Position numbers and translations under genes: made by a program. From positions 1 through 64,000 of the forward strand of contig JAPDFW010000044.1 of NCBI GenBank assembly GCA_028826165.1: DNA of 64,000 nt. Direction: 5' to 3'. How positions within the stretch are numbered: position 1 is the stretch's first letter; each line of letters starts with the position of its first letter. Under the pieces are notes generated by a model. The model was not told the DNA's origin, did not search any database, and worked only from the letters and a program-made list of their open reading frames with translations. The DNA comes from Anaeramoeba ignava BMAN. Its lineage: Eukaryota; Protista; Anaeramoebae. This document shows, piece after piece, positions 1 through 11,746 of this stretch.

Positions 1-1706
1 GATGATTCAACAATTTCTCCTTTATCATCTTCTTCACATTCTTGTGTTCTACATCCACAAATTGAAATATTATAATCATTTTCAGATTCTAAATTATTCA
101 AAAGATAATCAAGTGAGGAATTATCAACTGAAATGAAAGATATTAAATCAGGTTGAGATTGATTAAGATAAGAAAGATTATAATGATCAAGATGAGCAAT
201 TTCTTCATTGATTTGAACATTTGGATAATTCCATGTAACATTAATTGAATAATTTGAAGGATTTGATAATTGGAAATCTTTTACAGAATCAATTTTTGTT
301 GTTAAATTAATGAAAGAAGAAGATTCACCACATTTCATTGTTACATTATCACAAGCTTTGATTTGAATTGAATAATATTCATTCCCAGTAATATTATCAT
401 AAAATGAAGGATTAAATTGTTGATAATAAACATTCCCATCTTCAAGAATTGGAGAATCAATATCAACCCAATCATATCCATAATTAATTTGATATTCCAA
501 AGTTGGAATTTGAATTTTATTCCAATAACAATCAAATGATGAAAACAAAGATGAACAATTAACAATATTAACTTGAGGAATTTGTATAAATTCATAAACA
601 AATGCTTGATCTATAGCTCCAATAACAGTAAAATTCCCATAAATTGAAACACTTCTTCCAAAATCTGTAGCTGATTTACTCAAATTTTGTTCTTGATTCC
701 AAAATGTTCCATTATATCTGTAAATAAATGCTTGTTTTGCACCACGAGCTCCAATAACAATAACATTATCATAAACTGAAACACTTCTTCCAAAATCTGT
801 AACTGAAGGTTCACTAAAATTTTGTTCTTGATTCCAAAATGTTCCATTATATCTGTAAATAAATGTTTTTCTTGCATAAGTTCCAATAACAATAACATTT
901 TCATAACTTGAAACAAAAATTCCAAAATATATAACTGAAGGTTCACTAAAATTTTGTTCTTGATTCCAAAATGTTCCATTATATCTGTAAATAAATGCTT
1001 GATTTGCACCCGTTCCAATAACAATAACATTCTTATAAACTGAGGCAGTACATCCAAAATATGTAATTGAAGGTTCATTAAAATTTTGTTCTTGATTCCA
1101 AAATGTTCCATTATATCTGTAAATAAATACTTGATTTGCATTCGTTCCAATAACAGTAACATTTTCATAAATTGAAACAGAATTTCCAAAATATGTAATT
1201 GAAGGTTCACTAAAATTTTGTTCTTGATTCCAAAATGTTCCATTATATCTGTAAATAAATGCTTGATTTGAACTATAAGCACCAATAACAATAACATCTT
1301 CATAAACTGAAACAGAATATCCAAAAGATAAAGCTGAGGATTCATACAAAGTTTGTTCAAGTTCAAAATTTGTTCCATTATATCTGTAAATAAATGCTTG
1401 TTTTACACCATGAGCACCAATAACAATAACATCTTCGTAAACTGAAACAGAATATCCAAAACCTGATGGACCTGAAAATTGATCTAATAAATTCCAAATC
1501 CAAGCTTCATTGAAAGAAGAATAATATCTTGTTGTTTCTGTTAATAATCTTGTTGTTTCTAATTCTTGAATTATTGTGGAAATTGATTTTTGATGATTTT
1601 GATTTTGATTTTGATTTTGATTTTGATTTTGATTTTGATTTGATTGAATTAAGGAAATATTGATAATTAAGAAAAAGAAAAAGGAAAAGAAAAGATTAAA
1701 TTTCAT
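1..1706 (-). CDS. Secreted/surface protein: signal peptide, NQ tract, 7 FG-GAP-like beta-propeller repeats, then fibronectin type III-like domain(s); runs off the window edge
   Basis: Open frame from ATG 1706 (MKFNLFSFPFSFFLIINISLIQ) to base 1. It is missing from the ORF track because there is no stop in the window. Seven repeats of the type FGxSVSxYxxVIVIGAxxxxQAFIYRYNGT (132-135 bp period) are followed by FN3-like motifs (SINVTWNYP...YNLSY...LNNLESENDYIISICGC). Confidence 0.85.
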   Translation of the reverse strand, partial: MKFNLFFSFFFFLIINISLIQSNQNQNQNQNQNQNQNHQKSISTIIQELETTRLLTETTRYYSSFNEAWIWNLLDQFSGPSGFGYSVSVYEDVIVIGAHGVKQAFIYRYNGTNFELEQTLYESSALSFGYSVSVYEDVIVIGAYSSNQAFIYRYNGTFWNQEQNFSEPSITYFGNSVSIYENVTVIGTNANQVFIYRYNGTFWNQEQNFNEPSITYFGCTASVYKNVIVIGTGANQAFIYRYNGTFWNQEQNFSEPSVIYFGIFVSSYENVIVIGTYARKTFIYRYNGTFWNQEQNFSEPSVTDFGRSVSVYDNVIVIGARGAKQAFIYRYNGTFWNQEQNLSKSATDFGRSVSIYGNFTVIGAIDQAFVYEFIQIPQVNIVNCSSLFSSFDCYWNKIQIPTLEYQINYGYDWVDIDSPILEDGNVYYQQFNPSFYDNITGNEYYSIQIKACDNVTMKCGESSSFINLTTKIDSVKDFQLSNPSNYSINVTWNYPNVQINEEIAHLDHYNLSYLNQSQPDLISFISVDNSSLDYLLNNLESENDYNISICGCRTQECEEDDKGEIVES

Positions 1707-1972
1707 TGTTGTTTTTTTTTTTGCTTTTTTTTTAAATAAATAAATAAGATAAAAATAAGTAAGTATAAATAAATAAAATTATATTCTTGTTGTTTTTTTT
1801 GTGTTGTTTTTATGTTTTTCTTACTTTTTGTGTTTTTTGAATTTGTTGTTGTTTTTTTTTTGCTTTTTTTTTAAATAAATAAATAAGATAAAAATAAGTA
1901 AGTATAAATAAATTGTTGTTTTTATTTTTTTTTTTGTGTTTTTTTTATGTTTTTCTTACTTTTTGTTTTTTT
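1706..1972. repeat. ~135-bp tandem duplication directly upstream of the FG-GAP gene
   Basis: The block ttgctttttttttaaataaataaataagataaaaataagtaagtataaataaa...tatgtttttcttactttttg occurs twice (~1706-1838 and ~1846-1972). Confidence 0.85.
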
Positions 1973-2082: not shown

Positions 2083-3327
2083 TTAAAAAATGGAACACTT
2101 TTTGTCTTTTTTTGTTTGTTTTTTTCCTTTTGTTTCAAAATATTCTAATTGAGGAGAAAGAGAGGATTTTGGATGTAACTGATAAAAATCATGTGCTTGT
2201 TTTAATTCCTGAATAGTTTCCAAAGCAATAGATTCTTGGATAGTGTCTGTATAAAAAAATTGAATTAAAATTTGGAAAGTGTTGAATTTGGAATTTGTAT
2301 AATCTTTCACTTTGCCTGAATCATCGTGAACTTTATTAAACATTTCCCGATAAACTTCACTTCTTAATGCCAAAATAATTTTATGAACCTTGATTTCTTT
2401 TTCTTCAACAATTATTGAAAAATCTTTGCTTTCTTGATCAGAATAAAGTTTTTTCATATCTTCAATTAATTTTCTTCTTCCCATTTTAATTTCGATTCCA
2501 CTTGATTTGGATAATTCTTGAGTTTTTGGAGAATAAAATTGATCTAAACCTGAATAAATGCATTTAAGAAAAGAAACAACATCTTTTTTTTCGAAATTTT
2601 TCAATTTGTCAAGTTTTTCTTTATAATCATTTCCTATTCGATATTTTAAAAGTAAAGAATGCAAAGGAATTGGATCTTCATTTGGATTTGAAAAAATGAA
2701 TGAAAAATCAGTAAATTCTTTTCTTTCCAAAAATTGGAGCATTTCTTCTTGAAAAGTTGCCAAGAATTTAAATAAATAGTTTCTAATTTGCAAGACTTCG
2801 AAAACAGCTTTTTCGAATAAAAACTGAATATTTTGAGCGGTTTTCGCACTCACTTCAATAAAATGCATTCCGTTTTTTTTGGCAAATTCTTCACCTTGTT
2901 GAAAAGTAATTTTTCTTTGATTTTCCAAATCAATTTTATTTGCAATCAAAAATTTAGGAATTTCTTGGAATTCTTTATCACTAGAAAAGGATTCCTGAAG
3001 ATATTGAAAACGAGAAGGAATGATCTCAAAAGAATAAGTTGATTCAATTGAATAAACCAAAAATAAGCAATTTGCTTTACGAGCAGCCTGAGGCCAAAAA
3101 GCTGCGTAGTCTTCTTGTCCTGCTGTTACTATTGTTTCAATTAATATTTCTTCTCCTTGAATCATTATCGTTTTTTGGAATGTATCTTCTATCACTGGAT
3201 CATATTCATCGATAAATTCATCCAAATTGAATCTTTTTGCTATTCTTTCTCTTCCTGATCCTCCTGGCCCAAATATTACAATCGTTAATTTTTCTTTTTC
3301 TTTTTCTTTTTCTTTTTCTGAATCCAT
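2083..3327 (-). CDS. Ras-like (pseudo)GTPase fused to two BTB/POZ domains with a polybasic CAAX tail
   Basis: Ras-type effector loop FIDEYDPVIEDTF, TAGQE, NKID and SAK motifs. Two BTB segments (FTDFSF..IPLHSLLLKYR; KDFSIIVEEKEIKVHKIILALRSEVYREMF). C-terminus KKDKKCSIF. Confidence 0.9.
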   Translation of the reverse strand: MDSEKEKEKEKEKLTIVIFGPGGSGRERIAKRFNLDEFIDEYDPVIEDTFQKTIMIQGEEILIETIVTAGQEDYAAFWPQAARKANCLFLVYSIESTYSFEIIPSRFQYLQESFSSDKEFQEIPKFLIANKIDLENQRKITFQQGEEFAKKNGMHFIEVSAKTAQNIQFLFEKAVFEVLQIRNYLFKFLATFQEEMLQFLERKEFTDFSFIFSNPNEDPIPLHSLLLKYRIGNDYKEKLDKLKNFEKKDVVSFLKCIYSGLDQFYSPKTQELSKSSGIEIKMGRRKLIEDMKKLYSDQESKDFSIIVEEKEIKVHKIILALRSEVYREMFNKVHDDSGKVKDYTNSKFNTFQILIQFFYTDTIQESIALETIQELKQAHDFYQLHPKSSLSPQLEYFETKGKKQTKKDKKCSIF

Positions 3328-3405
3328 TTTATTTGAACTGACAAAAAAAATGAAAAATTAAAATCAAAATTAAAATTATTTTTTTCATTTTTTCTCTTTT
3401 CAAAA
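3328..3405. promoter_or_regulatory. 78-bp bidirectional promoter region with a TCATTT initiator-like motif on each strand
   Basis: Divergent ATGs at 3327 (-) and 3406 (+). aaaaatgaaaaa (TTTTTCATTTTT on -) near 3346-3357 and ttttttcattttt on + near 3380-3392. Confidence 0.55.
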
Positions 3406-5231
3406 ATGAATGAAATTTTATTTTTTGGTTTAAATAAATATCCAATTCTTTCAAAAATAAACCAGAAATAATAAAAAAACCAATTCAATTTAAATTTGAA
3501 AATGAAAATGAAAATGAAAATGAAAATGAAAATGAAAATGAAAATGAAAAACAAATTAAACAAATTTTATCAGGAAGATTTTCAACAATTTTCCTTTTTG
3601 AAAATGGAAAAGCAATAGAATATTTAAATGAAAAAAATTCAAAACAAAATCCTTCAAAAATCCAAATTGAAGAAAATATTCAAAAAGTAACTGTTGGTTA
3701 TGTGAATGTATCTATTTTAACAATAGAAGGAAATGTATTTGCAAAAGGATATGATATTAATCCAAATAATCCACATGAATTTATCAATATTTCATCATTA
3801 ATTGAAGATATAAATGATAGAATAATTGAAGATATTGTTTCTGGTGCTTATTCAGTTTACTTATTAACTTCAAATCAAAATGTTTATGTATTTGGTTCAA
3901 ATAATAATGGCCAACTTGGTTTTGATTCTGAAACACTTCCAAAAACAGAAAAACCAATTTTAATGATGAAAAATGTTTCTAAAATATTTTCAGGAAATTC
4001 TTCAAAACATGTTTTTCTTTTAAATTCAAATCAAGAATTATTTGGATGTGGTGATAATGATCGAAATCAACTTGGATTAGGCAAATCAACAAGAAATGAA
4101 ACAAAAATCCAAAAATTAACCAAAATCCAAAATATTCCAAAAGGTGAAATAATTGATATTCAATGTGGATGTATTTATTCAATAATGTTGATTGAAGATG
4201 AAAATCAAAATCCAAAAAGAAAATTTTATTCATGTGGAAATTATCAATTAAATGGACTTGGCAAATTGTATAGAGATACTTATGAATTTACTGAAATTAA
4301 ATCATCTTTATTTGAAAATGATGATATTATTGATTTTTCTTGTGGTTATTCTCATACTTTGATTTTAACTTCTAATTCAAAATTAATTGGATTTGGAAAT
4401 AATCAACAAGGTGAATTAGGAATTGAAGATACAAAAAATCAACCAATTCCAATTCAAATTGAACTTCCTAAATTAAGATTTAATGAAAATATTTCTAATT
4501 ATCATATTTCTTGTGGATATGAAAAATCATTTCTTTATTATTCTCCTTTTTTTTCCAATCTTGAAGAAGATTTGATAAAATTATTTGAAAGAAAAGAATT
4601 TTGTGATATTTCATTTAAAACAGAAAATGGAGAAATAATCAAAGCTCATAAATTAATATTAAAATATAGATTAAATCAAAATCAAAATGAAATTGAAAAA
4701 CTTAAAGAAATTATTTCAAAAAAATCAATTAAAGAATCAAATCAAATATTTGAAATGATTTATTCAAACAATAGAATAATAAATCCAAAATTATATTCAG
4801 AAATTAAAGAAATTATAAATTCCAATGAAAAAATTGAAGAAACAATGAAAAGAATTTATTTAAATGAAAATGAAAAAGATTTTATTATTGAAAGAAAAGA
4901 AAAACAATATAAATTCCCAAAATTAATATTAATAATGAGAAGTGAATTATATCGAGGAATGTTTTTATCTGTAACAAATGATACTTCTAATAAAGTTACA
5001 GATTATAGTGAATTAAGTAATAAATCATTCCAAATATTTGAATATTGGATTTATTCAAATCAAATTAAAGATGAAATTCAAATTACACAAGAGATAATTG
5101 ATGAAATTAAAAAAGGAATTGATTATTTTCAATTAAATCAAACAAATCCAAATTTAATTGATTTATTAATTAACAAATTTAATAATCAAAATCAAAATCA
5201 AAAAAAGAAAGAAAAATGTTTAATTTTTTGA
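3406..5231 (+). CDS. RCC1-repeat + double BTB protein, copy 1, with CAAX (apparent 1-nt frameshift near 3450)
   Basis: ATG 3406 matches the starts of the sister copies. One T is missing in ctttc versus cttttc in copy 2. RCC1 motifs (FGSNNNGQLG, SCGYSHTLIL), BTB motifs (FCDISF..IKAHKLIL; RSELYRGMF); ends KKKEKCLIF. Confidence 0.85.
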
Positions 5232-5286
5232 AAAGAAATTATTAATAAAATAAAAATTCATTTTTTCATTTTTTTTCTTTTCAAAA

Positions 5287-7275
5287 ATGGATGAAATTAT
5301 ATTTTTTGGTTTAAATGAAAAATCAATTCTTTTCAAAAATAAACCAGATTCAATAACAAAACCAATTCAATTTAAATTTGAAAATGAAAATGAAAATGAA
5401 AATGAAAAACAAATTAAACAAATTTCATCAGGAAATTATTCAACAATTTTCCTTTTTAAAAATGGAAAAGCAATAGAATATTTAAATGAAGAAAACGATT
5501 CAAAACAAAATCCTTCAAAAATCCAAATTGAAGAAAATATTCAAAAAGTAACTGTTGGTTTTCGAAATGAAGCTATTTTAACAATAGAAGGAAATGTATT
5601 TGCCAAAGGAAAAGATATTAATTCAGAAAATCCAAATGAATTTATCAATATTTCATCATTAATTGAAGATATAAATGATAGAATAATTCAAGATGTTGTT
5701 TCTGGAGCTTATTCAATTTACTTATTAACTTCAAATCAAAATGTTTATGGAATTGGTTTAAATTATTATGGTCAACTTGATGTTGATTCTGAAATACTTA
5801 AAAAAACAAAAAAACCAATTTTAATGATGAAAAATGTTTCTAAAATATTTTCAGGAAATGATTCATTTCATGTTTTTCTTTTAAATTCAAATCAAGAATT
5901 ATTTGGATGCGGAAATAATTATTATGGCCAACTTGGATTAGGAGAATCAAGAAAACAAGAAACAAAAATCCAAAAATTAACCAAAATCCAAAATATTCCA
6001 AAAGGTGAAATAATTGATATTCAATGTGGATATGCTCATTCAGTAATGTTGATTGAAAATGAAGATGAAAATGAAAATGAAAATCCAAAAAGAAAAATTT
6101 ATTCATGTGGAAAATGTGGAGTTAATGGACTTGACCAAAATAAAACTACTTATGAATTTACTGAAATTAAATCATCTTTATTTGAAAATGATGATAATAT
6201 TGAATTTTCTGTTGGAACTGAGCATACTTTGATTTTAACATCCAATTCAAAATTAATTGGATTTGGAAGAAATTACTTTGGTCAATTAGGAACTGGAGAT
6301 ACAAAAGATCAATTAATTCCAATTCAAATTGAACTTCCTAAATTAAGATTTAATGAAAATATTTCCAATTATCATATTTCTTGTGGATTTAACAATTCAT
6401 TTCTTTATTATTCTCCTCTTCCTTTTTCTAATCTTGAAGAAGATTTGATAAAATTATTTGAAAGAAAAGAATTTTGTGATATTTCATTTAAAACAGAAAA
6501 TGGAGAAATAATCAAAGCTCATAAATTAATATTAAAATATAGATTAAATCAAAATCAAAATGAAATTGAAAAACTTCAAGAAATTATTTCAAAAAAATCA
6601 ATTCAAGAATCAAATCAAATATTTGAAATGATTTATTCAAATAATTCCAATATAAATCCAAAATTATATTCTGAAATTAAAGAAATTATAAATTCAAATG
6701 AAAAAATTGAAGAAACAATTAAAAGAATTTATTTAAATGAAAATGATAAAGACTTTATTATTGAAAGAAAAGAAAAACAATATAAATTTCCTAAATTAAT
6801 ATTAATAATGAGAAGTGAATTATATCGAGGAATGTTTTTATCTGTAACTGAAGATAAATCCAATAAAGTTACAGATTATAGTGAATTAAGTAATAAATCA
6901 TTTCAAATATTTGAATATTGGATTTATTCAAATCAAATTAAAGATGAAATTCAAATTACAAAAGAAATTATTGATGAAATTAAAATTGGAATTGATTATT
7001 TTCAATTAAATCAAACAAATCCAAATTTATTTGATTTATTAATTAACAAATTTAATAATCAAAATCAATTAAAATTAAAATTAAAATTAAAATTAAAACC
7101 AAAATTAAAATTAAAATTAAAATTAAAATTAAAATTAAAATTAAAATTAAAATTAAAATTAAAATTAAAATTAAAATTAAAATTAAAATTAAAATTAAAA
7201 TTAAAATTAAAATTAAAATTAAAATTAAAATTCCAAAATTATTTTTTTCATTTTTTTCTTTTCAAAAATGAATGA
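5287..7275 (+). CDS. RCC1-repeat + double BTB protein, copy 2 (reads through an AAAATT repeat; the true stop is probably near 7070)
   Basis: Near-identical to its neighbours. caaaatcaattaa at 7060-7072 versus caaaatcaaaattaa (stop) in copy 3 yields a poly-LK tail that overlaps the copy 3 ATG. Confidence 0.85.
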   Translation: MDEIIFFGLNEKSILFKNKPDSITKPIQFKFENENENENEKQIKQISSGNYSTIFLFKNGKAIEYLNEENDSKQNPSKIQIEENIQKVTVGFRNEAILTIEGNVFAKGKDINSENPNEFINISSLIEDINDRIIQDVVSGAYSIYLLTSNQNVYGIGLNYYGQLDVDSEILKKTKKPILMMKNVSKIFSGNDSFHVFLLNSNQELFGCGNNYYGQLGLGESRKQETKIQKLTKIQNIPKGEIIDIQCGYAHSVMLIENEDENENENPKRKIYSCGKCGVNGLDQNKTTYEFTEIKSSLFENDDNIEFSVGTEHTLILTSNSKLIGFGRNYFGQLGTGDTKDQLIPIQIELPKLRFNENISNYHISCGFNNSFLYYSPLPFSNLEEDLIKLFERKEFCDISFKTENGEIIKAHKLILKYRLNQNQNEIEKLQEIISKKSIQESNQIFEMIYSNNSNINPKLYSEIKEIINSNEKIEETIKRIYLNENDKDFIIERKEKQYKFPKLILIMRSELYRGMFLSVTEDKSNKVTDYSELSNKSFQIFEYWIYSNQIKDEIQITKEIIDEIKIGIDYFQLNQTNPNLFDLLINKFNNQNQLKLKLKLKLKPKLKLKLKLKLKLKLKLKLKLKLKLKLKLKLKLKLKLKLKLKLKFQNYFFHFFLFKNE

Positions 7276-9085
7276 AATTATATTTTTTGGTTCAAATGAA
7301 TATCCAAAACTTATCAAAAATGAACCAAATAAAATAAAAAAACCAATTCAATTTAAATTTGAAAATGAAAATGAAAATGAAAATGGAAAACAAATTAAAC
7401 AAATTTCACCTTCAAGATTTTCAACAATTTTCCTTTTTAAAAATGGAAAAGCAATAGAATATTTAAAAGATTCAAATCCAAATCCTGAAAAAATCCAAAT
7501 TGAAGAAAATATTCAAAAAGTAACTGTTGGTTATCACAATGAAGCTATTTTAACAATAGAAGGAAATGTATTTGCAAAAGAAGAAAATATTAATCCAAAT
7601 AATCCAAATGAATTTATCAATATTTCATCATTAATTGAAGATACAAATGATAGAATAATTAAAGATATTGTTTCTGGATACAGATCAATTTACTTATTAA
7701 CTTCAAATCAAAATGTTTATGGAATTGGCTCAAATGATTCTGGTCAACTTGGTTTTGATTCTAAAACACTTCCAAAAACAGAAAAACCAATTTTAATGAT
7801 GAAAAATGTTTCTAAAATATTTTCAGGAAATTCTTCAATTCATGTTTTTCTTTTAAATTCAAATCAAGAATTATTTGGATGCGGATGGAATTTTTATGCT
7901 CAACTCGGATTAGGAGAATCAAGAAAACAAGAAACAACAATCCAAAAATTAACTAAAATCCAAAATATTCCAAAAGGTAAAATAATTGATATTCAATGTG
8001 GATATCGGCATTCAATAATGTTGATTGAAAATGAAAATGAAAATCAAAATCAAAATCAAAATCAAAATCAAAATCAAAATCAAAATCCAAAAAGAAAACT
8101 TTATTCATGTGGAAGTTATCAATTAAATGGACTTGACCAAAATAAAAATATTTATGAATTTACTGAAATTAAATCATCTTTATTTGAAAATGATAATATT
8201 ATTGATTTTTCTTGTGGAACTGATCATACTTTGATTTTAACTTCTAATTCAAAATTAATTGGATTTGGAGATAATTCTCATGGCCAATTAGGAACTAGAG
8301 ATACAAATACACAATCAATTCCAATTCAAATTGAATTTCCTAAATTAAGATTTAATGAAGATATTTCTAATTATCATATTTCTTGTGGATTTCGGAATTC
8401 ATTTCTTTATTATTCTCCTTTTCTTTCTTCTTTTTCCAATATTGAAGAAGATTTGATAAAATTATTTGAAAGAAAAGAATTTTGTGATATTTCATTTAAA
8501 ACCAAAAATGGAGAAATAATCAAAGCTCATAAATTAATATTAAAATATAGATTAAATCAAAATGAAAATGAAATTGAAAAACTTCAAGAAATTATTTCAA
8601 AAAAATCAATTAAAGAATCAAATCAAATATTTGAAATGATTTATTCAAACAGAATAATAAATCCAAAATTATATTCAGAAATTAAAGAAATTATAAATTT
8701 AAATGAAAAAATTGAAGAAACAATTAAAAGAATTTATTTAAATGAAAATGAAAATGAAAAAGATTTTATAATTGAAAGAAAAGAAAAAGAATATAAATTC
8801 CCTAAATTAATATTAATAATGAGAAGTGAATTATACCGAGGAATGTTTTTATCTGTTACAGAAGATAAATCTAATAAAGTTACAGATTATAGTGAATTAA
8901 GTAATAAATCATTTCAAATATTAGAATATTGGATTTATTCAAATCAAATTAAAGATGAAATTCAAATTACACAAGAAATAATTAATGAAATTCAATTTGG
9001 AATTGATTACTTTCAATTAAATCAAACAAATCCAAATTTATTTGATTTATTAATTAACAAATTTAATAATCAAAATCAAAATTAA
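7268..9085 (+). CDS. RCC1-repeat + double BTB protein, copy 3
   Basis: Intact 605-aa ORF with the same RCC1 and BTB motifs; no CAAX. Confidence 0.9.
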   Translation: MNEIIFFGSNEYPKLIKNEPNKIKKPIQFKFENENENENGKQIKQISPSRFSTIFLFKNGKAIEYLKDSNPNPEKIQIEENIQKVTVGYHNEAILTIEGNVFAKEENINPNNPNEFINISSLIEDTNDRIIKDIVSGYRSIYLLTSNQNVYGIGSNDSGQLGFDSKTLPKTEKPILMMKNVSKIFSGNSSIHVFLLNSNQELFGCGWNFYAQLGLGESRKQETTIQKLTKIQNIPKGKIIDIQCGYRHSIMLIENENENQNQNQNQNQNQNQNPKRKLYSCGSYQLNGLDQNKNIYEFTEIKSSLFENDNIIDFSCGTDHTLILTSNSKLIGFGDNSHGQLGTRDTNTQSIPIQIEFPKLRFNEDISNYHISCGFRNSFLYYSPFLSSFSNIEEDLIKLFERKEFCDISFKTKNGEIIKAHKLILKYRLNQNENEIEKLQEIISKKSIKESNQIFEMIYSNRIINPKLYSEIKEIINLNEKIEETIKRIYLNENENEKDFIIERKEKEYKFPKLILIMRSELYRGMFLSVTEDKSNKVTDYSELSNKSFQILEYWIYSNQIKDEIQITQEIINEIQFGIDYFQLNQTNPNLFDLLINKFNNQNQN

Positions 9086-9209
9086 AATAAAAATTAAAAT
9101 CAAAATTAAAATTAAAAATTAAAATTAAAATTAAAATTAAAATTAAAATTAAAATTAAAATTAAAATTAAAATTCCAAAATTATTTTTTTCATTTTTTTC
9201 TTTTCAAAA

Positions 9210-11004
9210 ATGAATGAAATTATATTTTTTGGTTCAAATGAATATCCAAAACTTATCAAAAATGAACCAAATAAAATAAAAAAACCAATTCAATTTAAAT
9301 TTGAAAATGAAAATGAAAATGAAAATGGAAAAACAAATTAAACAAATTTCAACAGGAAGATTTTCAACAATTTTCCTTTTTAAAAATGGAAAAGCAATAG
9401 AATATTTAAAAGATTCAAATCAAAATCCTGAAAAAATCCAAATTGAAGAAAATATTCAAAAAGTAACTGTTGGTTATCACAATGAAGCTATTTTAACAAT
9501 AGAAGGAAATGTATTTGCAAAAGAAGAAAATATTAATCCAAATAATCCAAATGAATTTATCAATATTTCATCATTAATTGAAGATACAAATGATAGAATA
9601 ATTAAAGATATTGTTTCTGGATACAGATCAATTTACTTATTAACTTCAAATCAAAATGTTTATGGAATTGGCTCAAATGATTCTGGTCAACTTGGTTTTG
9701 ATTCTGAAACACTTAAAAAAACAGAAAAACCAATTTTAATGATGAAAAATGTTTCTAAAATATTTTCAGGAAATTCTTCAATTCATGTTTTTCTTTTAAA
9801 TTCAAATCAAGAATTATTTGGATGCGGATGGAATTTTTATGCTCAACTCGGATTAGGAGAATCAAGAAAACAAGAAACAACAATCCAAAAATTAACTAAA
9901 ATCCAAAATATTCCAAAAGGTAAAATAATTGATATTCAATGTGGATATCGGCATTCAATAATGTTGATTGAAAATGAAAATCAAAATCAAAATCAAAATC
10001 AAAATCAAAATCCAAAAAGAAAACTTTATTCATGTGGAAGTTATCAATTAAATGGACTTGACCAAAATAAAAATATTTATGAATTTACTGAAATTAAATC
10101 ATCTTTATTTGAAAATGATGATAATATTATTGATTTTTCTTGTGGAACTGATCATACTTTGATTTTAACTTCTAATTCAAAATTAATAGTATTTGGATAT
10201 AATGAATATGGCCAATTAGGAACTAGAGATACAAATACACAATCAATTCCAATTCAAATTGAATTTCCTAAATTAAGATTTAATGAAAATATTTTCAATT
10301 ATCATATTTCTTGTGGATTTCGGAATTCATTTCTTTATTATTCTCCTTCTTATTTTTCATCTTCTTTTTCCAATCTTGAAGAAGATTTGATAAAATTATT
10401 TGAAAGAAAAGAATTTTGTGATATTTCATTTAAAACCAAAAATGGAGAAATAATCAAAGCTCATAAATTAATATTAAAATATAGATTAAATCAAAATGAA
10501 AATGAAATTGAAAAACTTCAAGAAATTATTTCAAAAAAATCAATTAAAGAATCAAATCAAATATTTGAAATGATTTATTCAAATAATTCCAATATAAATC
10601 CAAAATTATATTCTGAAATTAAAGAAATTATAAATTCAAATGAAAAAATTGAAGAAACAATTAAAAGAATTTATTTAAATGAAAATGATAAAGACTTTAT
10701 TATTGAAAGAAAAGAAAAACAATATAAATTTCCTAAATTAATATTAATAATGAGAAGTGAATTATATCGAGGAATGTTTTTATCTGTAACTGAAGATAAA
10801 TCCAATAAAGTTACAGATTATAGTGAATTAAGTAATAAATCATTTCAAATATTTGAATATTGGATTTATTCAAATCAAATTAAAGATGAAATTCAAATTA
10901 CACAAGAAATCATTAATGAAATTCAAATTGGAATTGATTATTTTCAATTAAATCAAACAAATCCAAATTTATTTGATTTATTAATTAATAAATTTAATAA
11001 TTAA
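9210..11004 (+). CDS. RCC1-repeat + double BTB protein, copy 4 (apparent +1 frameshift near 9330)
   Basis: ATG 9210 and the 5' end are identical to copy 3. One extra A in ggaaaaacaa versus ggaaaacaa. No CAAX. Confidence 0.85.
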
Positions 11005-11116
11005 TAATCAAAATCAAAATTAAAATAAAAATTAAAAATTAAAATTAAAATCAAATTTTAAAAAAAATTTATTTGGAAAATATTTTGAGAAAAAAAAAAA
11101 AGGAAAATCTTTTCAT

Positions 11117-11746
11117 TCATTGATTATCATTTTCATTTTGATTTTCATTTTCATCAAAAAAACCAGCCAAAGTAGAAAAAGCAGCAGGAACGAAAGTTCT
11201 TGTAGCAAATTGTTGAATTTTTTTACGGGAATCCTTTTCACATTTAGCATAACCCCAAATATTAGTAACAGCAAGAACAATAGCAATCAAACAAACGGTT
11301 CCCCAAAGAAAATTAAGCTTCAAAACTGAAAGAAATTCAAAAAGAAGCCAAGCACCCAAAAAAATAAACTGAGTAAACCAAAAAGCAATTGAGTCGGTTT
11401 TATTAGAATTTTCCGCTTTTGGTTTTGATTCAAAAATCCATTTGCTATTTCCATCTGAATCTATTTCATTCCACCATCTTAATCCAACTAATTTTCTTCC
11501 TGAAATATTTTTCACAACCCAAAAATCAATTGATAATAAAACAACAATAAACATAAAAATAACGGAAAAACTGTTCACAAATGATGATGCAATTAAATAC
11601 GTTATTAACGCTATTGTTTTGAATAATAAATGAAATATAATCACTATTTTATTGCTTTTTGTGGTTTTTGTTTGTGTTTCTTGGTCATTAAAATCATCTC
11701 CTAATTCTTGTGAAATAAAAGGTTGTGATTCTAAATCTTGATCCAT
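11117..11746 (-). CDS. TVP23: Golgi membrane protein TVP23/FAM18 family
   Basis: Family signature DFWVVKNISGRKLVGLRWWNEIDSDGNSKWIFES, plus FHLLFK and hydrophobic TM segments. Confidence 0.92.
   Translation of the reverse strand: MDQDLESQPFISQELGDDFNDQETQTKTTKSNKIVIIFHLLFKTIALITYLIASSFVNSFSVIFMFIVVLLSIDFWVVKNISGRKLVGLRWWNEIDSDGNSKWIFESKPKAENSNKTDSIAFWFTQFIFLGAWLLFEFLSVLKLNFLWGTVCLIAIVLAVTNIWGYAKCEKDSRKKIQQFATRTFVPAAFSTLAGFFDENENQNENDNQ

What the first reader, a model, noticed from the sequence alone, without database searches (positions are those of the whole stretch)
2083..11004. Modular 'variable head + BTB-BTB(+CAAX)' locus: candidate diversified membrane-surveillance/ubiquitin-adaptor system
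Seen: a Ras-headed gene and four RCC1-headed genes share a homologous double-BTB tail (FLERKEFTDFSF..LHSLLLKYR..RSEVYREMF..KVKDYT versus LFERKEFCDISF..AHKLILKYR..RSELYRGMF..KVTDYS). The Ras gene and RCC1 copy 1 are head-to-head across 78 bp, and both end in polybasic CAAX (CSIF, CLIF). Known: BTB domains dimerise and often act as Cullin-3 substrate adaptors, and CAAX directs prenylation. Inference: a swappable-head repertoire of co-expressed, membrane-anchored recognition modules (a decoy GTPase plus variable propellers) that route bound targets to degradation, conceptually like sensor/decoy immune-receptor pairs.
Basis: partly seen in the sequence, partly recalled or inferred. Interest (0 to 1): 0.8.

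Follow-up and report, generated by a model that had tools for sequence, protein, structure and literature searches.

The report
Ras-BTB gene beside RCC1-BTB array
In the anaerobic amoeba Anaeramoeba ignava, a lipid-anchored, catalytically dead Ras-like protein and four propeller proteins share the same double-BTB tail of the kind that docks ubiquitin ligases, but they sit side by side probably by chance, because the propeller family has about 1,150 copies spread over the genome.

Summary
A 414-aa Ras-like/BTB/BTB gene (2083-3327, minus strand) lies 78 bp head-to-head with the first of four tandem RCC1/BTB/BTB genes. The tails are homologous (35% identity, E=3e-26). The Ras gene ends in CSIF and RCC1 copy 1 in CLIF.

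The genome is Anaeramoeba ignava or a very close relative. The double-BTB tail is a lineage-specific module joined to ankyrin, RCC1, Ras/Rab, WD40, Sel1, Kelch, G-alpha or no head, so the swappable head is real.

The paired sensor/decoy idea is not supported:
- The RCC1-BTB family has about 1,145 copies, one per 37 kb. This scan has found it many times on other DNA of this genome.
- The six Ras-BTB genes have RCC1-BTB neighbours in varied geometry, not clearly more often than random windows (P about 0.05-0.16).
- Ras and RCC1 tails form separate old clades.
- RCC1 copies 2-4 lack CAAX.
- Copies 1, 2 and 4 carry frame or stop lesions in the assembly.

The Ras head is a conserved pseudo-GTPase.

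Most likely these are independent, partly prenylated cullin-3-type substrate adaptors, analogous to RhoBTB3 and IBTK/RCBTB. Expression and cullin binding could not be tested.

The parts
2083..3327 (-). Ras-like pseudo-GTPase / BTB-like / BTB / polybasic-CAAX gene (414 aa, no intron), one of six paralogues in the genome
   Evidence: ORF and Pfam Ras + BTB. Six paralogues found in the own genome. The best matches are all Anaeramoeba ignava proteins.
2791..3282 (-). G domain (residues 16-179), Ras-type. The P-loop reads GPGGSGRE (K16->R, S17->E), switch I T35->V, DxxG D57->V. NKID and SAK are kept.
   Evidence: Alignment to KRas (E=2.5e-29). The same substitutions recur in the paralogues.
2440..2730 (-). 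First, shortened BTB-like domain (residues about 200-296)
   Evidence: pLDDT 82-92 in the model. The tail profile's positions 6-87 match the CP190 BTB at E=3e-6.
2173..2448 (-). Second, canonical BTB domain (residues 294-385) with V-H-D at the phi-x-E position
   Evidence: Pfam BTB E=2.9e-13. Profile matches to KBTBD4, KBTBD2, SPOP and KLHL3. Motif defined in PMC3616122.
2086..2127 (-). Polybasic stretch plus CAAX box (KGKKQTKKDKKCSIF)
   Evidence: Sequence. All six paralogues end in a polybasic stretch plus C[SL]IF.
3328..3405 (.). 78-bp divergent spacer holding two back-to-back copies of a T-rich TTCATTTTTT motif (3345-3354 on the - strand, 3384-3393 on the + strand), each 20-30 bp before its ATG
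   Evidence: Sequence. The motif also lies upstream of unrelated genes in the window, so it is a general core-promoter-like element.
3406..5231 (+). RCC1-BTB-BTB copy 1, the CAAX type (ends KKKEKCLIF). The frame is broken by a 1-bp deletion at 3450/3451, and the long frame runs 3462-5231.
5287..7275 (+). RCC1-BTB-BTB copy 2. It has no CAAX. The stop was lost by a 2-bp deletion near 7068, so the (AAAATT)n spacer is read as (LK)n and overlaps copy 3's ATG.
7268..9085 (+). RCC1-BTB-BTB copy 3 (605 aa), the only clean full-length copy. It has a seven-blade RCC1-like propeller plus two BTB domains, V-T-E at the phi-x-E position, and no CAAX.
   Evidence: Pfam. Model pLDDT 83.4. Foldseek matches to HERC2, RPGR and RCC1 propellers at E about 1e-24.
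9210..11004 (+). RCC1-BTB-BTB copy 4, 97.3% identical in DNA to copy 3. It has an extra A near 9329 that shifts the frame after the NE repeat, and no CAAX.

Best explanation
The locus is the edge of one tandem array of the roughly 1,150-copy hypervariable RCC1-BTB-BTB family of Anaeramoeba ignava. That edge happens to abut one of six Ras-like pseudo-GTPase/BTB/BTB/CAAX genes.

Both genes belong to a large Anaeramoeba-specific superfamily. It is defined by a constant C-terminal module: a shortened BTB, a canonical BTB, and sometimes a polybasic CAAX end. This module is fused to interchangeable N-terminal protein-binding heads.

Inferred mechanism: each protein acts on its own as a substrate receptor of a cullin-3-type ubiquitin ligase. 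The head binds the target. The second BTB dimerises and docks the cullin. Where a CAAX box is present, prenylation plus the basic patch places the complex on a membrane.

The Ras head has lost the residues that bind phosphate and Mg2+. It therefore most likely serves as a constitutive binding or autoregulatory module, as proposed for RhoBTB, and not as a switch.

Shown here: the domain architecture, the family sizes, the selection pattern, the pseudo-GTPase substitutions, and the lack of a clear excess of Ras/RCC1 pairing.

Inferred only: cullin binding, prenylation, membrane location and degradation of targets.
For: - Organism and family: all close hits are A. ignava.
- There are six Ras-BTB genes in the own genome.
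- A family-specific 24-mer has 1,145 matches against 0 for the control. All 107 scored RCC1-head matches are about 80% identical.
- Head census; the sampled names are all Anaeramoeba except one spider protein.
- The second BTB is nearest to Cul3 adaptors. The phi-x-E position reads V-T-E in the RCC1 copies and V-H-D in the Ras gene.
- About 8 cullin loci and three prenyltransferase beta genes are present.
- Propeller dN/dS is about 1.2 and tail dN/dS 0.38 at equal dS of about 0.11.
- Pseudo-GTPase: K16R, S17E, T35V and D57V against KRas, recurring in the paralogues.
- Neighbour geometry differs among the six loci, and the linkage is not clearly above the random expectation.
- The window and the C1 locus share a Ras-BTB + FG-GAP/fn3 gene pair but carry RCC1 copies in different places.
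- Ras tails have branches of 0.12-0.29 against 0-0.06 for RCC1 tails, so the RCC1 expansion is much younger.
Against: - Five of six Ras-BTB genes do have an RCC1-BTB copy within about 10 kb. This is nominally unusual (P about 0.045-0.07), so some preferential linkage is not excluded.
- The null rests on only 20 random windows from six contigs.
- No helices follow the last BTB helix in the model, so the 3-box that strengthens Cul3 binding is absent.
- The Ras-BTB has D in place of E in the phi-x-E motif.
- The second BTB of the Ras-BTB model has low confidence (pLDDT below 50).
- There is no expression, binding or localisation evidence of any kind.
Confidence: 0.6

Rival explanations
1. The Ras-BTB and the adjacent RCC1-BTB form a co-expressed, membrane-anchored sensor/decoy pair, like head-to-head plant NLR pairs. 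A decoy GTPase baits effectors and the variable propellers recognise them.
For: - Head-to-head arrangement with a 78-bp spacer, and both genes carry CAAX.
- A second head-to-head Ras-BTB/RCC1-BTB arrangement exists on C62.
- The head is a conserved pseudo-GTPase.
- The propellers are hypervariable.
Against: - Only 2 of 6 loci are head-to-head, and their spacers differ (78 bp against 1.1 kb).
- The linkage is not clearly above chance.
- The partner copy 1 is frame-broken in the assembly.
- The partners at C62 and C70 lack CAAX, and the C62 partner is also frameshifted.
- The spacer holds two copies of a generic promoter-like motif also found at unrelated genes.
- There are about 1,145 RCC1-BTB genes but only six Ras-BTB genes.
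Confidence: 0.07
2. Anchor-hub model. The few prenylated GTPase-BTB proteins form heterodimers through their BTB tail with the mostly non-prenylated RCC1-BTB receptors, and so bring them to membranes such as phagosomes or the symbiosome. Genomic proximity would be incidental.
For: - The tails are homologous across head classes.
- BTB domains of RhoBTB proteins form homo- and heterodimers (PMC4931677).
- 9 of the 11 GTPase-headed members seen end in CXXX. Only about 7.5-15% of RCC1-BTB copies do.
Against: - The tails are only 35% identical and lie in separate clades, which argues against matched dimer interfaces.
- No interaction data exist.
- Some RCC1-BTB and ankyrin-BTB copies carry their own CAAX box.
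Confidence: 0.1
3. The double-BTB tail is an oligomerisation or scaffolding module with no cullin link, so the family acts by sequestration or clustering and not by ubiquitylation.
For: - The model has no 3-box helices after the BTB core.
- The first BTB is degenerate.
- Many BTB families, such as BTB-ZF proteins and CP190, are not cullin adaptors (one search lists them among the matches).
Against: - The best-scoring solved relatives of the second BTB are all Cul3 adaptors (KBTBD4, KBTBD2, SPOP).
- The RCC1-BTB copies keep a phi-x-E-type motif (V-T-E).
- The tail is under purifying selection.
Confidence: 0.2

Closest known systems
RhoBTB proteins (RhoBTB1-3; Dictyostelium RacA), especially RhoBTB3
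   Same: - An atypical small GTPase domain is followed by two BTB domains.
- They act as Cul3 adaptors and their BTB domains homo- and heterodimerise.
- The GTPase domain is not a classical switch.
- RhoBTB3 carries a C-terminal CAAX box and is membrane (Golgi) associated (PMC4931677).
   Different: - The head here is Ras-type: its best solved relatives are KRas and HRas.
- There is no proline-rich linker.
- The first BTB is shortened, not bipartite with an insert.
- There is no BACK/3-box-like C-terminal region.
- All four phosphate/Mg-binding residues are replaced.
- The tail groups with Anaeramoeba ankyrin/RCC1/Rab tails, so this is most likely an independent fusion.
IBTK and RCBTB1/2 (RCC1-repeat plus BTB proteins; PANTHER 'Btk-binding protein-related')
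   Same: - An RCC1-like propeller joined to BTB domain(s).
- IBTK is a proven Cul3 substrate receptor (PMC4447969).
- The depositors' annotation labels A. flamelloides homologues 'Btk-binding protein-related'.
   Different: - There are no N-terminal ankyrin repeats.
- Animals have 1-3 genes against about 1,145 near-identical copies here, with hypervariable propeller positions.
- A minority of copies carry CAAX.
- Orthology was not tested.
Expanded, positively selected Cul3/SCF adaptor families (MATH-BTB and F-box genes of nematodes and grasses; Thomas 2006, Genome Research, cited from my own knowledge; its title terms occur in PMC4091423, whose text I did not open)
   Same: A constant ligase-docking domain under constraint is joined to a rapidly diversifying substrate-binding domain in a large tandemly arrayed family. 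This has been proposed to be a defence-type recognition repertoire.
   Different: - The recognition domain is an RCC1 propeller or a pseudo-GTPase, not MATH.
- The docking module is a double BTB.
- The copy number is roughly ten times larger.
- Some members are prenylated.
Paired head-to-head plant NLR sensor/helper genes with integrated decoys (named from my own knowledge)
   Same: Divergent gene orientation over a short spacer, and one partner with a degenerate domain that could be a decoy.
   Different: - There is no NLR domain.
- The pairing does not recur consistently among paralogues, and there is no matched co-evolution of partners.

Membership tests
RhoBTB subfamily | Rho-type GTPase domain | tested here: not met
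   The best solved relatives are KRas and HRas (E=2.5e-29). The alignment is collinear with Ras apart from a 4-residue difference. Pfam assigns the Ras family.
RhoBTB subfamily | Tandem of two BTB domains after the GTPase | tested here: met
   The tail profile matches BTB structures with both halves. Pfam finds the second BTB.
RhoBTB subfamily | Proline-rich linker, bipartite first BTB with an insert, and a BACK/3-box-like C-terminal region (PMC4931677) | tested here: not met
   The linker is IRNYLFKFLATFQEEM with no proline run. The first BTB is shorter than canonical. Only a polybasic CAAX end follows helix A5.
Cullin-3 substrate adaptor (BTB class) | BTB fold related to known Cul3-binding BTBs | tested here: met
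   Profile against the PDB: KBTBD4 2.2e-10, KBTBD2 2.6e-9, SPOP 1.3e-7, KLHL3 1.1e-5.
Cullin-3 substrate adaptor (BTB class) | phi-x-E motif after helix A3 (PMC3616122) | tested here: inconclusive
   RCC1-BTB copies read V-T-E, the Rab-BTB reads I-S-E, and the Ras-BTB paralogues read V-H-D, V-K-D or V-Q-D. The loop is about two residues shorter than in KLHL3, so the register is uncertain.
Cullin-3 substrate adaptor (BTB class) | 3-box helices following the BTB | tested here: not met
   The model of copy 3 ends with helix 591-604 (A5) and nothing follows it.
Cullin-3 substrate adaptor (BTB class) | Physical binding to Cul3 and substrate ubiquitylation | not testable with these tools
   Cullin genes exist in the genome (about 8 loci; PANTHER cullin family in the genome paper's supplement). 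A Cul3 orthologue was not identified, and no complex could be modelled.
IBTK/RCBTB (RCC1-BTB) | RCC1-like propeller followed by BTB domain(s) | tested here: met
   Pfam RCC1, RLD and BTB. Foldseek matches to HERC2, RPGR and RCC1 with TM-score normalised to the target (TMt) of 0.73-0.82.
IBTK/RCBTB (RCC1-BTB) | Orthology to animal IBTK/RCBTB, and N-terminal ankyrin repeats for IBTK | not tested
   No ankyrin repeats are present in these copies. No phylogeny with animal sequences was made. The tail's full-length relatives that I sampled were all Anaeramoeba except one spider protein.
CAAX-prenylated proteins | C-terminal Cys-aliphatic-aliphatic-X with prenyltransferases present | tested here: met
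   CSIF and CLIF are preceded by Lys-rich stretches. There are three prenyltransferase beta-subunit genes, and alpha and beta subunits are listed in the genome paper's supplement. Actual modification is untested.
Pseudo-GTPases | Loss of the conserved nucleotide/Mg-binding residues with a retained G-domain fold | tested here: met
   K16R, S17E, T35V and D57V against KRas, with NKxD and SAK kept. The substitutions are shared by the paralogues. The G-domain model reaches pLDDT 85-95 over most of its length. Nucleotide binding itself is untested.

The most novel reading that the evidence does not exclude
The prenylated pseudo-GTPase/BTB/BTB proteins (six Ras-type, plus Rab-type and others) are membrane anchors or hubs for the thousand-member hypervariable RCC1-BTB repertoire. 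They form heterodimers with it through the shared double-BTB tail. Recognition of a target by a soluble propeller would then be coupled to ubiquitylation at a defined membrane, such as the phagosome or the symbiont-bearing compartment. The loose genomic linkage seen at five of six Ras-BTB loci would be a trace of that partnership.
Probability: 0.1. Interest if true: 0.8.

Novelty: new variant of a known kind. Interest (0 to 1): 0.5.

Why it matters
The locus shows, side by side, two branches of a very large lineage-specific family. In this family a constant ligase-type double-BTB module has been joined to many binding heads, and one branch has expanded to about 1,150 hypervariable copies. BTB and RCC1 are each absent from the main text of the A. 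ignava genome paper.

A Ras-type pseudo-GTPase fused to BTB-BTB-CAAX is an independent parallel to animal RhoBTB3. It suggests that placing a dead GTPase in front of a cullin adaptor is a recurrent solution.

If the adaptors really feed a ubiquitin ligase at membranes, the system could bear on how this amoeba handles prey, symbionts or viruses. Showing that the head-to-head pairing is probably incidental keeps later work from chasing a sensor/decoy model that the data do not support.

Tried and rejected
The null for linkage therefore rests on 20 windows.
- The word-based protein search with the tail region alone found only 7 proteins and was useless as a census. The exhaustive profile search replaced it.
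- The look-up of encoding contigs for the Rab-BTB protein returned nothing, so the neighbours of the Rab-BTB genes were not examined.
- A Pfam scan of all 150 representatives at once exceeded the size limit and was split in two.
- A transposon origin for the RCC1-BTB unit was considered but not followed up. The only upstream element I saw shared by the RCC1 copies is a roughly 30-bp promoter-like motif that also occurs at unrelated genes. Terminal repeats and target-site duplications were not searched for.
- Recent exchange of tails between the neighbouring Ras and RCC1 genes was rejected. The tails are 35% identical and sit in separate, well-supported clades.
- An intron as the explanation for copy 1's frame break was rejected. 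The sequence around 3450 has no GT...AG, and copies 2-4 are collinear apart from one base.
- The G-alpha-headed member reported by Pfam could not be picked out by a simple motif search.

Full report
**What is in the sequence**

The window is very AT-rich (about 20% GC). It is the first 64 kb of contig C35 of a 42.8-Mb assembly.

The minus-strand ORF 2083-3327 encodes 414 aa. Pfam finds a Ras domain at residues 16-179 (E=1.6e-36) and a BTB domain at 294-385.

On the plus strand lie four tandem genes with RCC1 repeats plus BTB.

The ATG of the Ras gene (3327) and the ATG of the first RCC1 gene (3406) are 78 bp apart.

The two kinds of protein share a C-terminal region of about 215 aa, at 35% identity and E=3e-26. 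A profile of 15 such tails matches solved BTB domains with both halves. The first half matches the CP190 BTB (E=3e-6). The second half matches KBTBD4, KBTBD2, SPOP and KLHL3 (E from 2e-10 to 1e-5).

The Ras gene ends KKDKKCSIF and RCC1 copy 1 ends KKKEKCLIF.

- Copy 1 has a 1-bp deletion at 3450/3451, 15 codons after its ATG. The long frame therefore starts only at 3462.
- Copy 4 has an extra A in an A-run near 9329.
- Copy 2 has lost its stop through a 2-bp loss near 7068. It reads the (AAAATT)n spacer as (LK)n into copy 3's start.
- Only copy 3 (7268-9085, 605 aa) is clean.
- Copies 2-4 end in NKFNN(QNQN) with no CAAX box.

All three lesions lie in homopolymers or microsatellites, so they may be assembly errors.

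**Organism and family sizes**

Every close protein hit is from Anaeramoeba ignava. The published A. ignava BMAN genome is 80.65% A+T (PMC11550330).

In the window's own genome the Ras-BTB subfamily has six members, on C35, C126, C62, C70, C1 and C76. All six end in a polybasic stretch plus C[SL]IF.

The RCC1-BTB family is enormous:
- All 107 scored matches to the propeller are about 80% identical in protein.
- A family-specific 24-mer occurs 1,145 times within two mismatches, against 0 for the control. That is one copy per 37 kb.
- Copies are 86-97% identical in DNA.

BTB and RCC1 are each absent from the genome paper's main text (0 occurrences). This scan has already described the RCC1-BTB repertoire many times on other DNA of this genome. 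My count, made before I read those notes, agrees with theirs.

**The swappable head is real**

A profile of the tail, searched against 1.84 billion cluster representatives, finds 541 clusters at E<=1e-30. The top 151 carry the whole tail at their C-terminus. Their heads are distributed as follows:

| Head | Number of 151 |
|---|---|
| Ankyrin | 77 |
| RCC1 | 39 |
| Ras-family | 9 |
| WD40 propeller | about 7 |
| Sel1 | 2 |
| Kelch | 1 |
| G-alpha | 1 |
| None | the rest |

Nine of ten sampled representatives are Anaeramoeba proteins.

CXXX ends are found in 9 of the 11 GTPase-headed members I saw, and in a few ankyrin or Sel1 members. Among RCC1-BTB copies they are a minority. The CLIF-encoding 25-mer has 86 matches genome-wide against 0-1 for the control, about 7.5% of the family. 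In my own sample, 2 of about 13 copies have it.

**The Ras head is a conserved pseudo-GTPase**

Against KRas the P-loop Lys16 is Arg, Ser17 is Glu, switch-I Thr35 is Val and Asp57 of DxxG is Val. NKxD and SAK are kept.

The paralogues share Arg (5 of 6) at the Lys16 position. At the Ser17 position they have an acidic or amide residue. Val at Asp57 is shared by all six, and Val at Thr35 by the closest paralogues. The loss is therefore old and maintained.

The G domain folds with confidence in the model (pLDDT 85-95 over most of its length).

**Selection**

For eight full copies, Nei-Gojobori dN/dS is about 1.2 in the propeller (range 0.8-1.9) and 0.38 in the tail. dS is about 0.11 in both.

Variation is concentrated at recurring positions of each blade, next to the conserved CG..H and G.N..GQLG motifs. 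At 28 such positions, which I picked partly from the variability profile itself, pN is 0.49, against 0.08 elsewhere in the propeller.

The propeller model (pLDDT 83.4) matches HERC2, RPGR and RCC1 propellers.

**Is the Ras/RCC1 pairing special?**

Neighbours of the six Ras-BTB genes:

| Locus | RCC1-BTB neighbour |
|---|---|
| Window (C35) | Head-to-head, 78 bp |
| C62 | Head-to-head, 1.1 kb, next to an array of at least four copies |
| C70 | Immediately downstream, same strand |
| C1 | 5.1 kb downstream |
| C126 | 6 kb upstream, with a zinc-finger gene between |
| C76 | None; an ankyrin-BTB gene lies upstream instead |

Of 20 random 10-kb windows, four hold an RCC1-BTB copy. This is three of 19 if the window that landed on the C126 Ras-BTB locus is left out.

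With that background:
- Three of six within a 10-kb window has P=0.11-0.16.
- Five of six within about 20 kb has P=0.045-0.07.
- Fisher's test gives 0.12.

The partners at C62 and C70 lack CAAX, and the C62 partner is itself frameshifted.

The window and the C1 locus are paralogous segments. Both have a secreted FG-GAP/fn3 gene downstream of the Ras-BTB gene, but the RCC1 copies sit in different places.

In a tree of tails, the Ras, Rab and expanded-RCC1 tails are separate clades (support 100/100, 100/100 and 100/99) joined at an unresolved deep node. Ras branches (0.12-0.29) are far longer than RCC1 branches (0-0.06). The RCC1 expansion is therefore much younger than the Ras-BTB duplications, and there is no sign of matched partners or local exchange of tails.

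The 78-bp spacer holds two back-to-back copies of a TTCATTTTTT motif. The same motif also precedes unrelated genes in the window. It looks like two independent minimal promoters and not a dedicated bidirectional control region.

**Mechanism**

The most economical reading is that each protein is an independent substrate receptor of a cullin-3-type ligase.

In favour:
- The second BTB is closest to proven Cul3 adaptors.
- The position of the phi-x-E Cul3-contact motif (PMC3616122) reads V-T-E in the RCC1 copies and V-H-D in the Ras gene.
- The genome has about eight cullin loci.

Against:
- No 3-box helices follow the BTB in the model.
- Binding was not tested.

CSIF and CLIF, each with an upstream Lys-rich patch, are plausible prenylation and membrane signals. 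Three prenyltransferase beta genes are present, and prenyltransferase subunit families are listed in the genome paper's supplement.

By analogy with RhoBTB, the dead Ras head would act as a binding or autoinhibitory module. In RhoBTB the GTPase domain binds the first BTB and holds the adaptor inactive (PMC4931677). This step is inference.

**Comparison with known systems**

- The Ras-BTB gene works like RhoBTB3: an atypical GTPase, two BTBs and a CAAX box. It fails the RhoBTB membership tests: a Ras-type head, no proline-rich linker, a shortened first BTB and no BACK-like end.
- The RCC1-BTB genes have the IBTK/RCBTB architecture (PMC4447969), but at about 1,145 copies and with hypervariable loops.
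- The pattern of a constrained docking module and a diversifying binding module matches the expanded MATH-BTB and F-box families of nematodes and grasses (Thomas 2006, cited from my own knowledge).

**Verdict**

The modular head plus BTB-BTB idea is supported and is genome-wide.

The novelty is a new variant of known kinds. The larger RCC1-BTB repertoire has already been reported by this scan from other windows.

Noticed in passing
window 3-1709 (-): A secreted FG-GAP-repeat/fn3 protein gene runs off the contig end (signal-peptide-like start MKFNLFFSFFFF...). It is paralogous to L004:2931-5603, which lies beside the C1 Ras-BTB gene, so the two loci are paralogous segments. The 232-aa ORF at 680-1378 listed mechanically is an out-of-frame shadow of its repeats.
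   Followed up: partly
window 3345, 3384, 5257, 7247, 9189, 11778, 11790, 50721 and others: The T-rich motif TTCATTTTTT lies 20-60 bp upstream of the ATG of many unrelated genes, on the coding strand. It may be a general initiator-like core promoter element of A. ignava, and it recalls the TCA initiator of Trichomonas (from my own knowledge).
   Followed up: partly
window 7069-7260, 9086-9180, 11005-11060: (AAAATT)n microsatellites separate the RCC1-BTB copies. In copy 2 the repeat is in frame and adds an (LK)n tail.
   Followed up: partly
G000:C101:161000-179000 and G000:C60:775000-794000: Two dense tandem arrays of about 20 and about 12 stand-alone Ras-like genes of about 200 aa. They are the closest stand-alone relatives (31-41% identity) of the Ras-BTB head.
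   Followed up: no
proteins P0041, P0080, P0107 (Anaeramoeba): Further small-GTPase/BTB/BTB proteins end in polybasic CKIL, CQIM and CSIM. They keep an intact GK[ST] P-loop but have a degenerate DxxG motif. GTPase-BTB-CAAX fusions therefore form several lineages.
   Followed up: partly
alignment A7 (representatives): One member combines a G-alpha subunit domain (Pfam E=9e-64) with the double-BTB tail. I could not identify which protein it is.
   Followed up: no
own genome: The plain BTB Pfam model gives 3,711 first-look candidates, and all 150 scored matches exceed 75 bits, many in frames of about 500 aa. A further very large BTB family, distinct from the double-BTB tail, seems to exist.
   Followed up: no
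window 11117-11746 (-): An ordinary TVP23/DUF846 Golgi membrane protein gene (Pfam E=4.5e-47) bounds the RCC1-BTB array on the right.
   Followed up: yes
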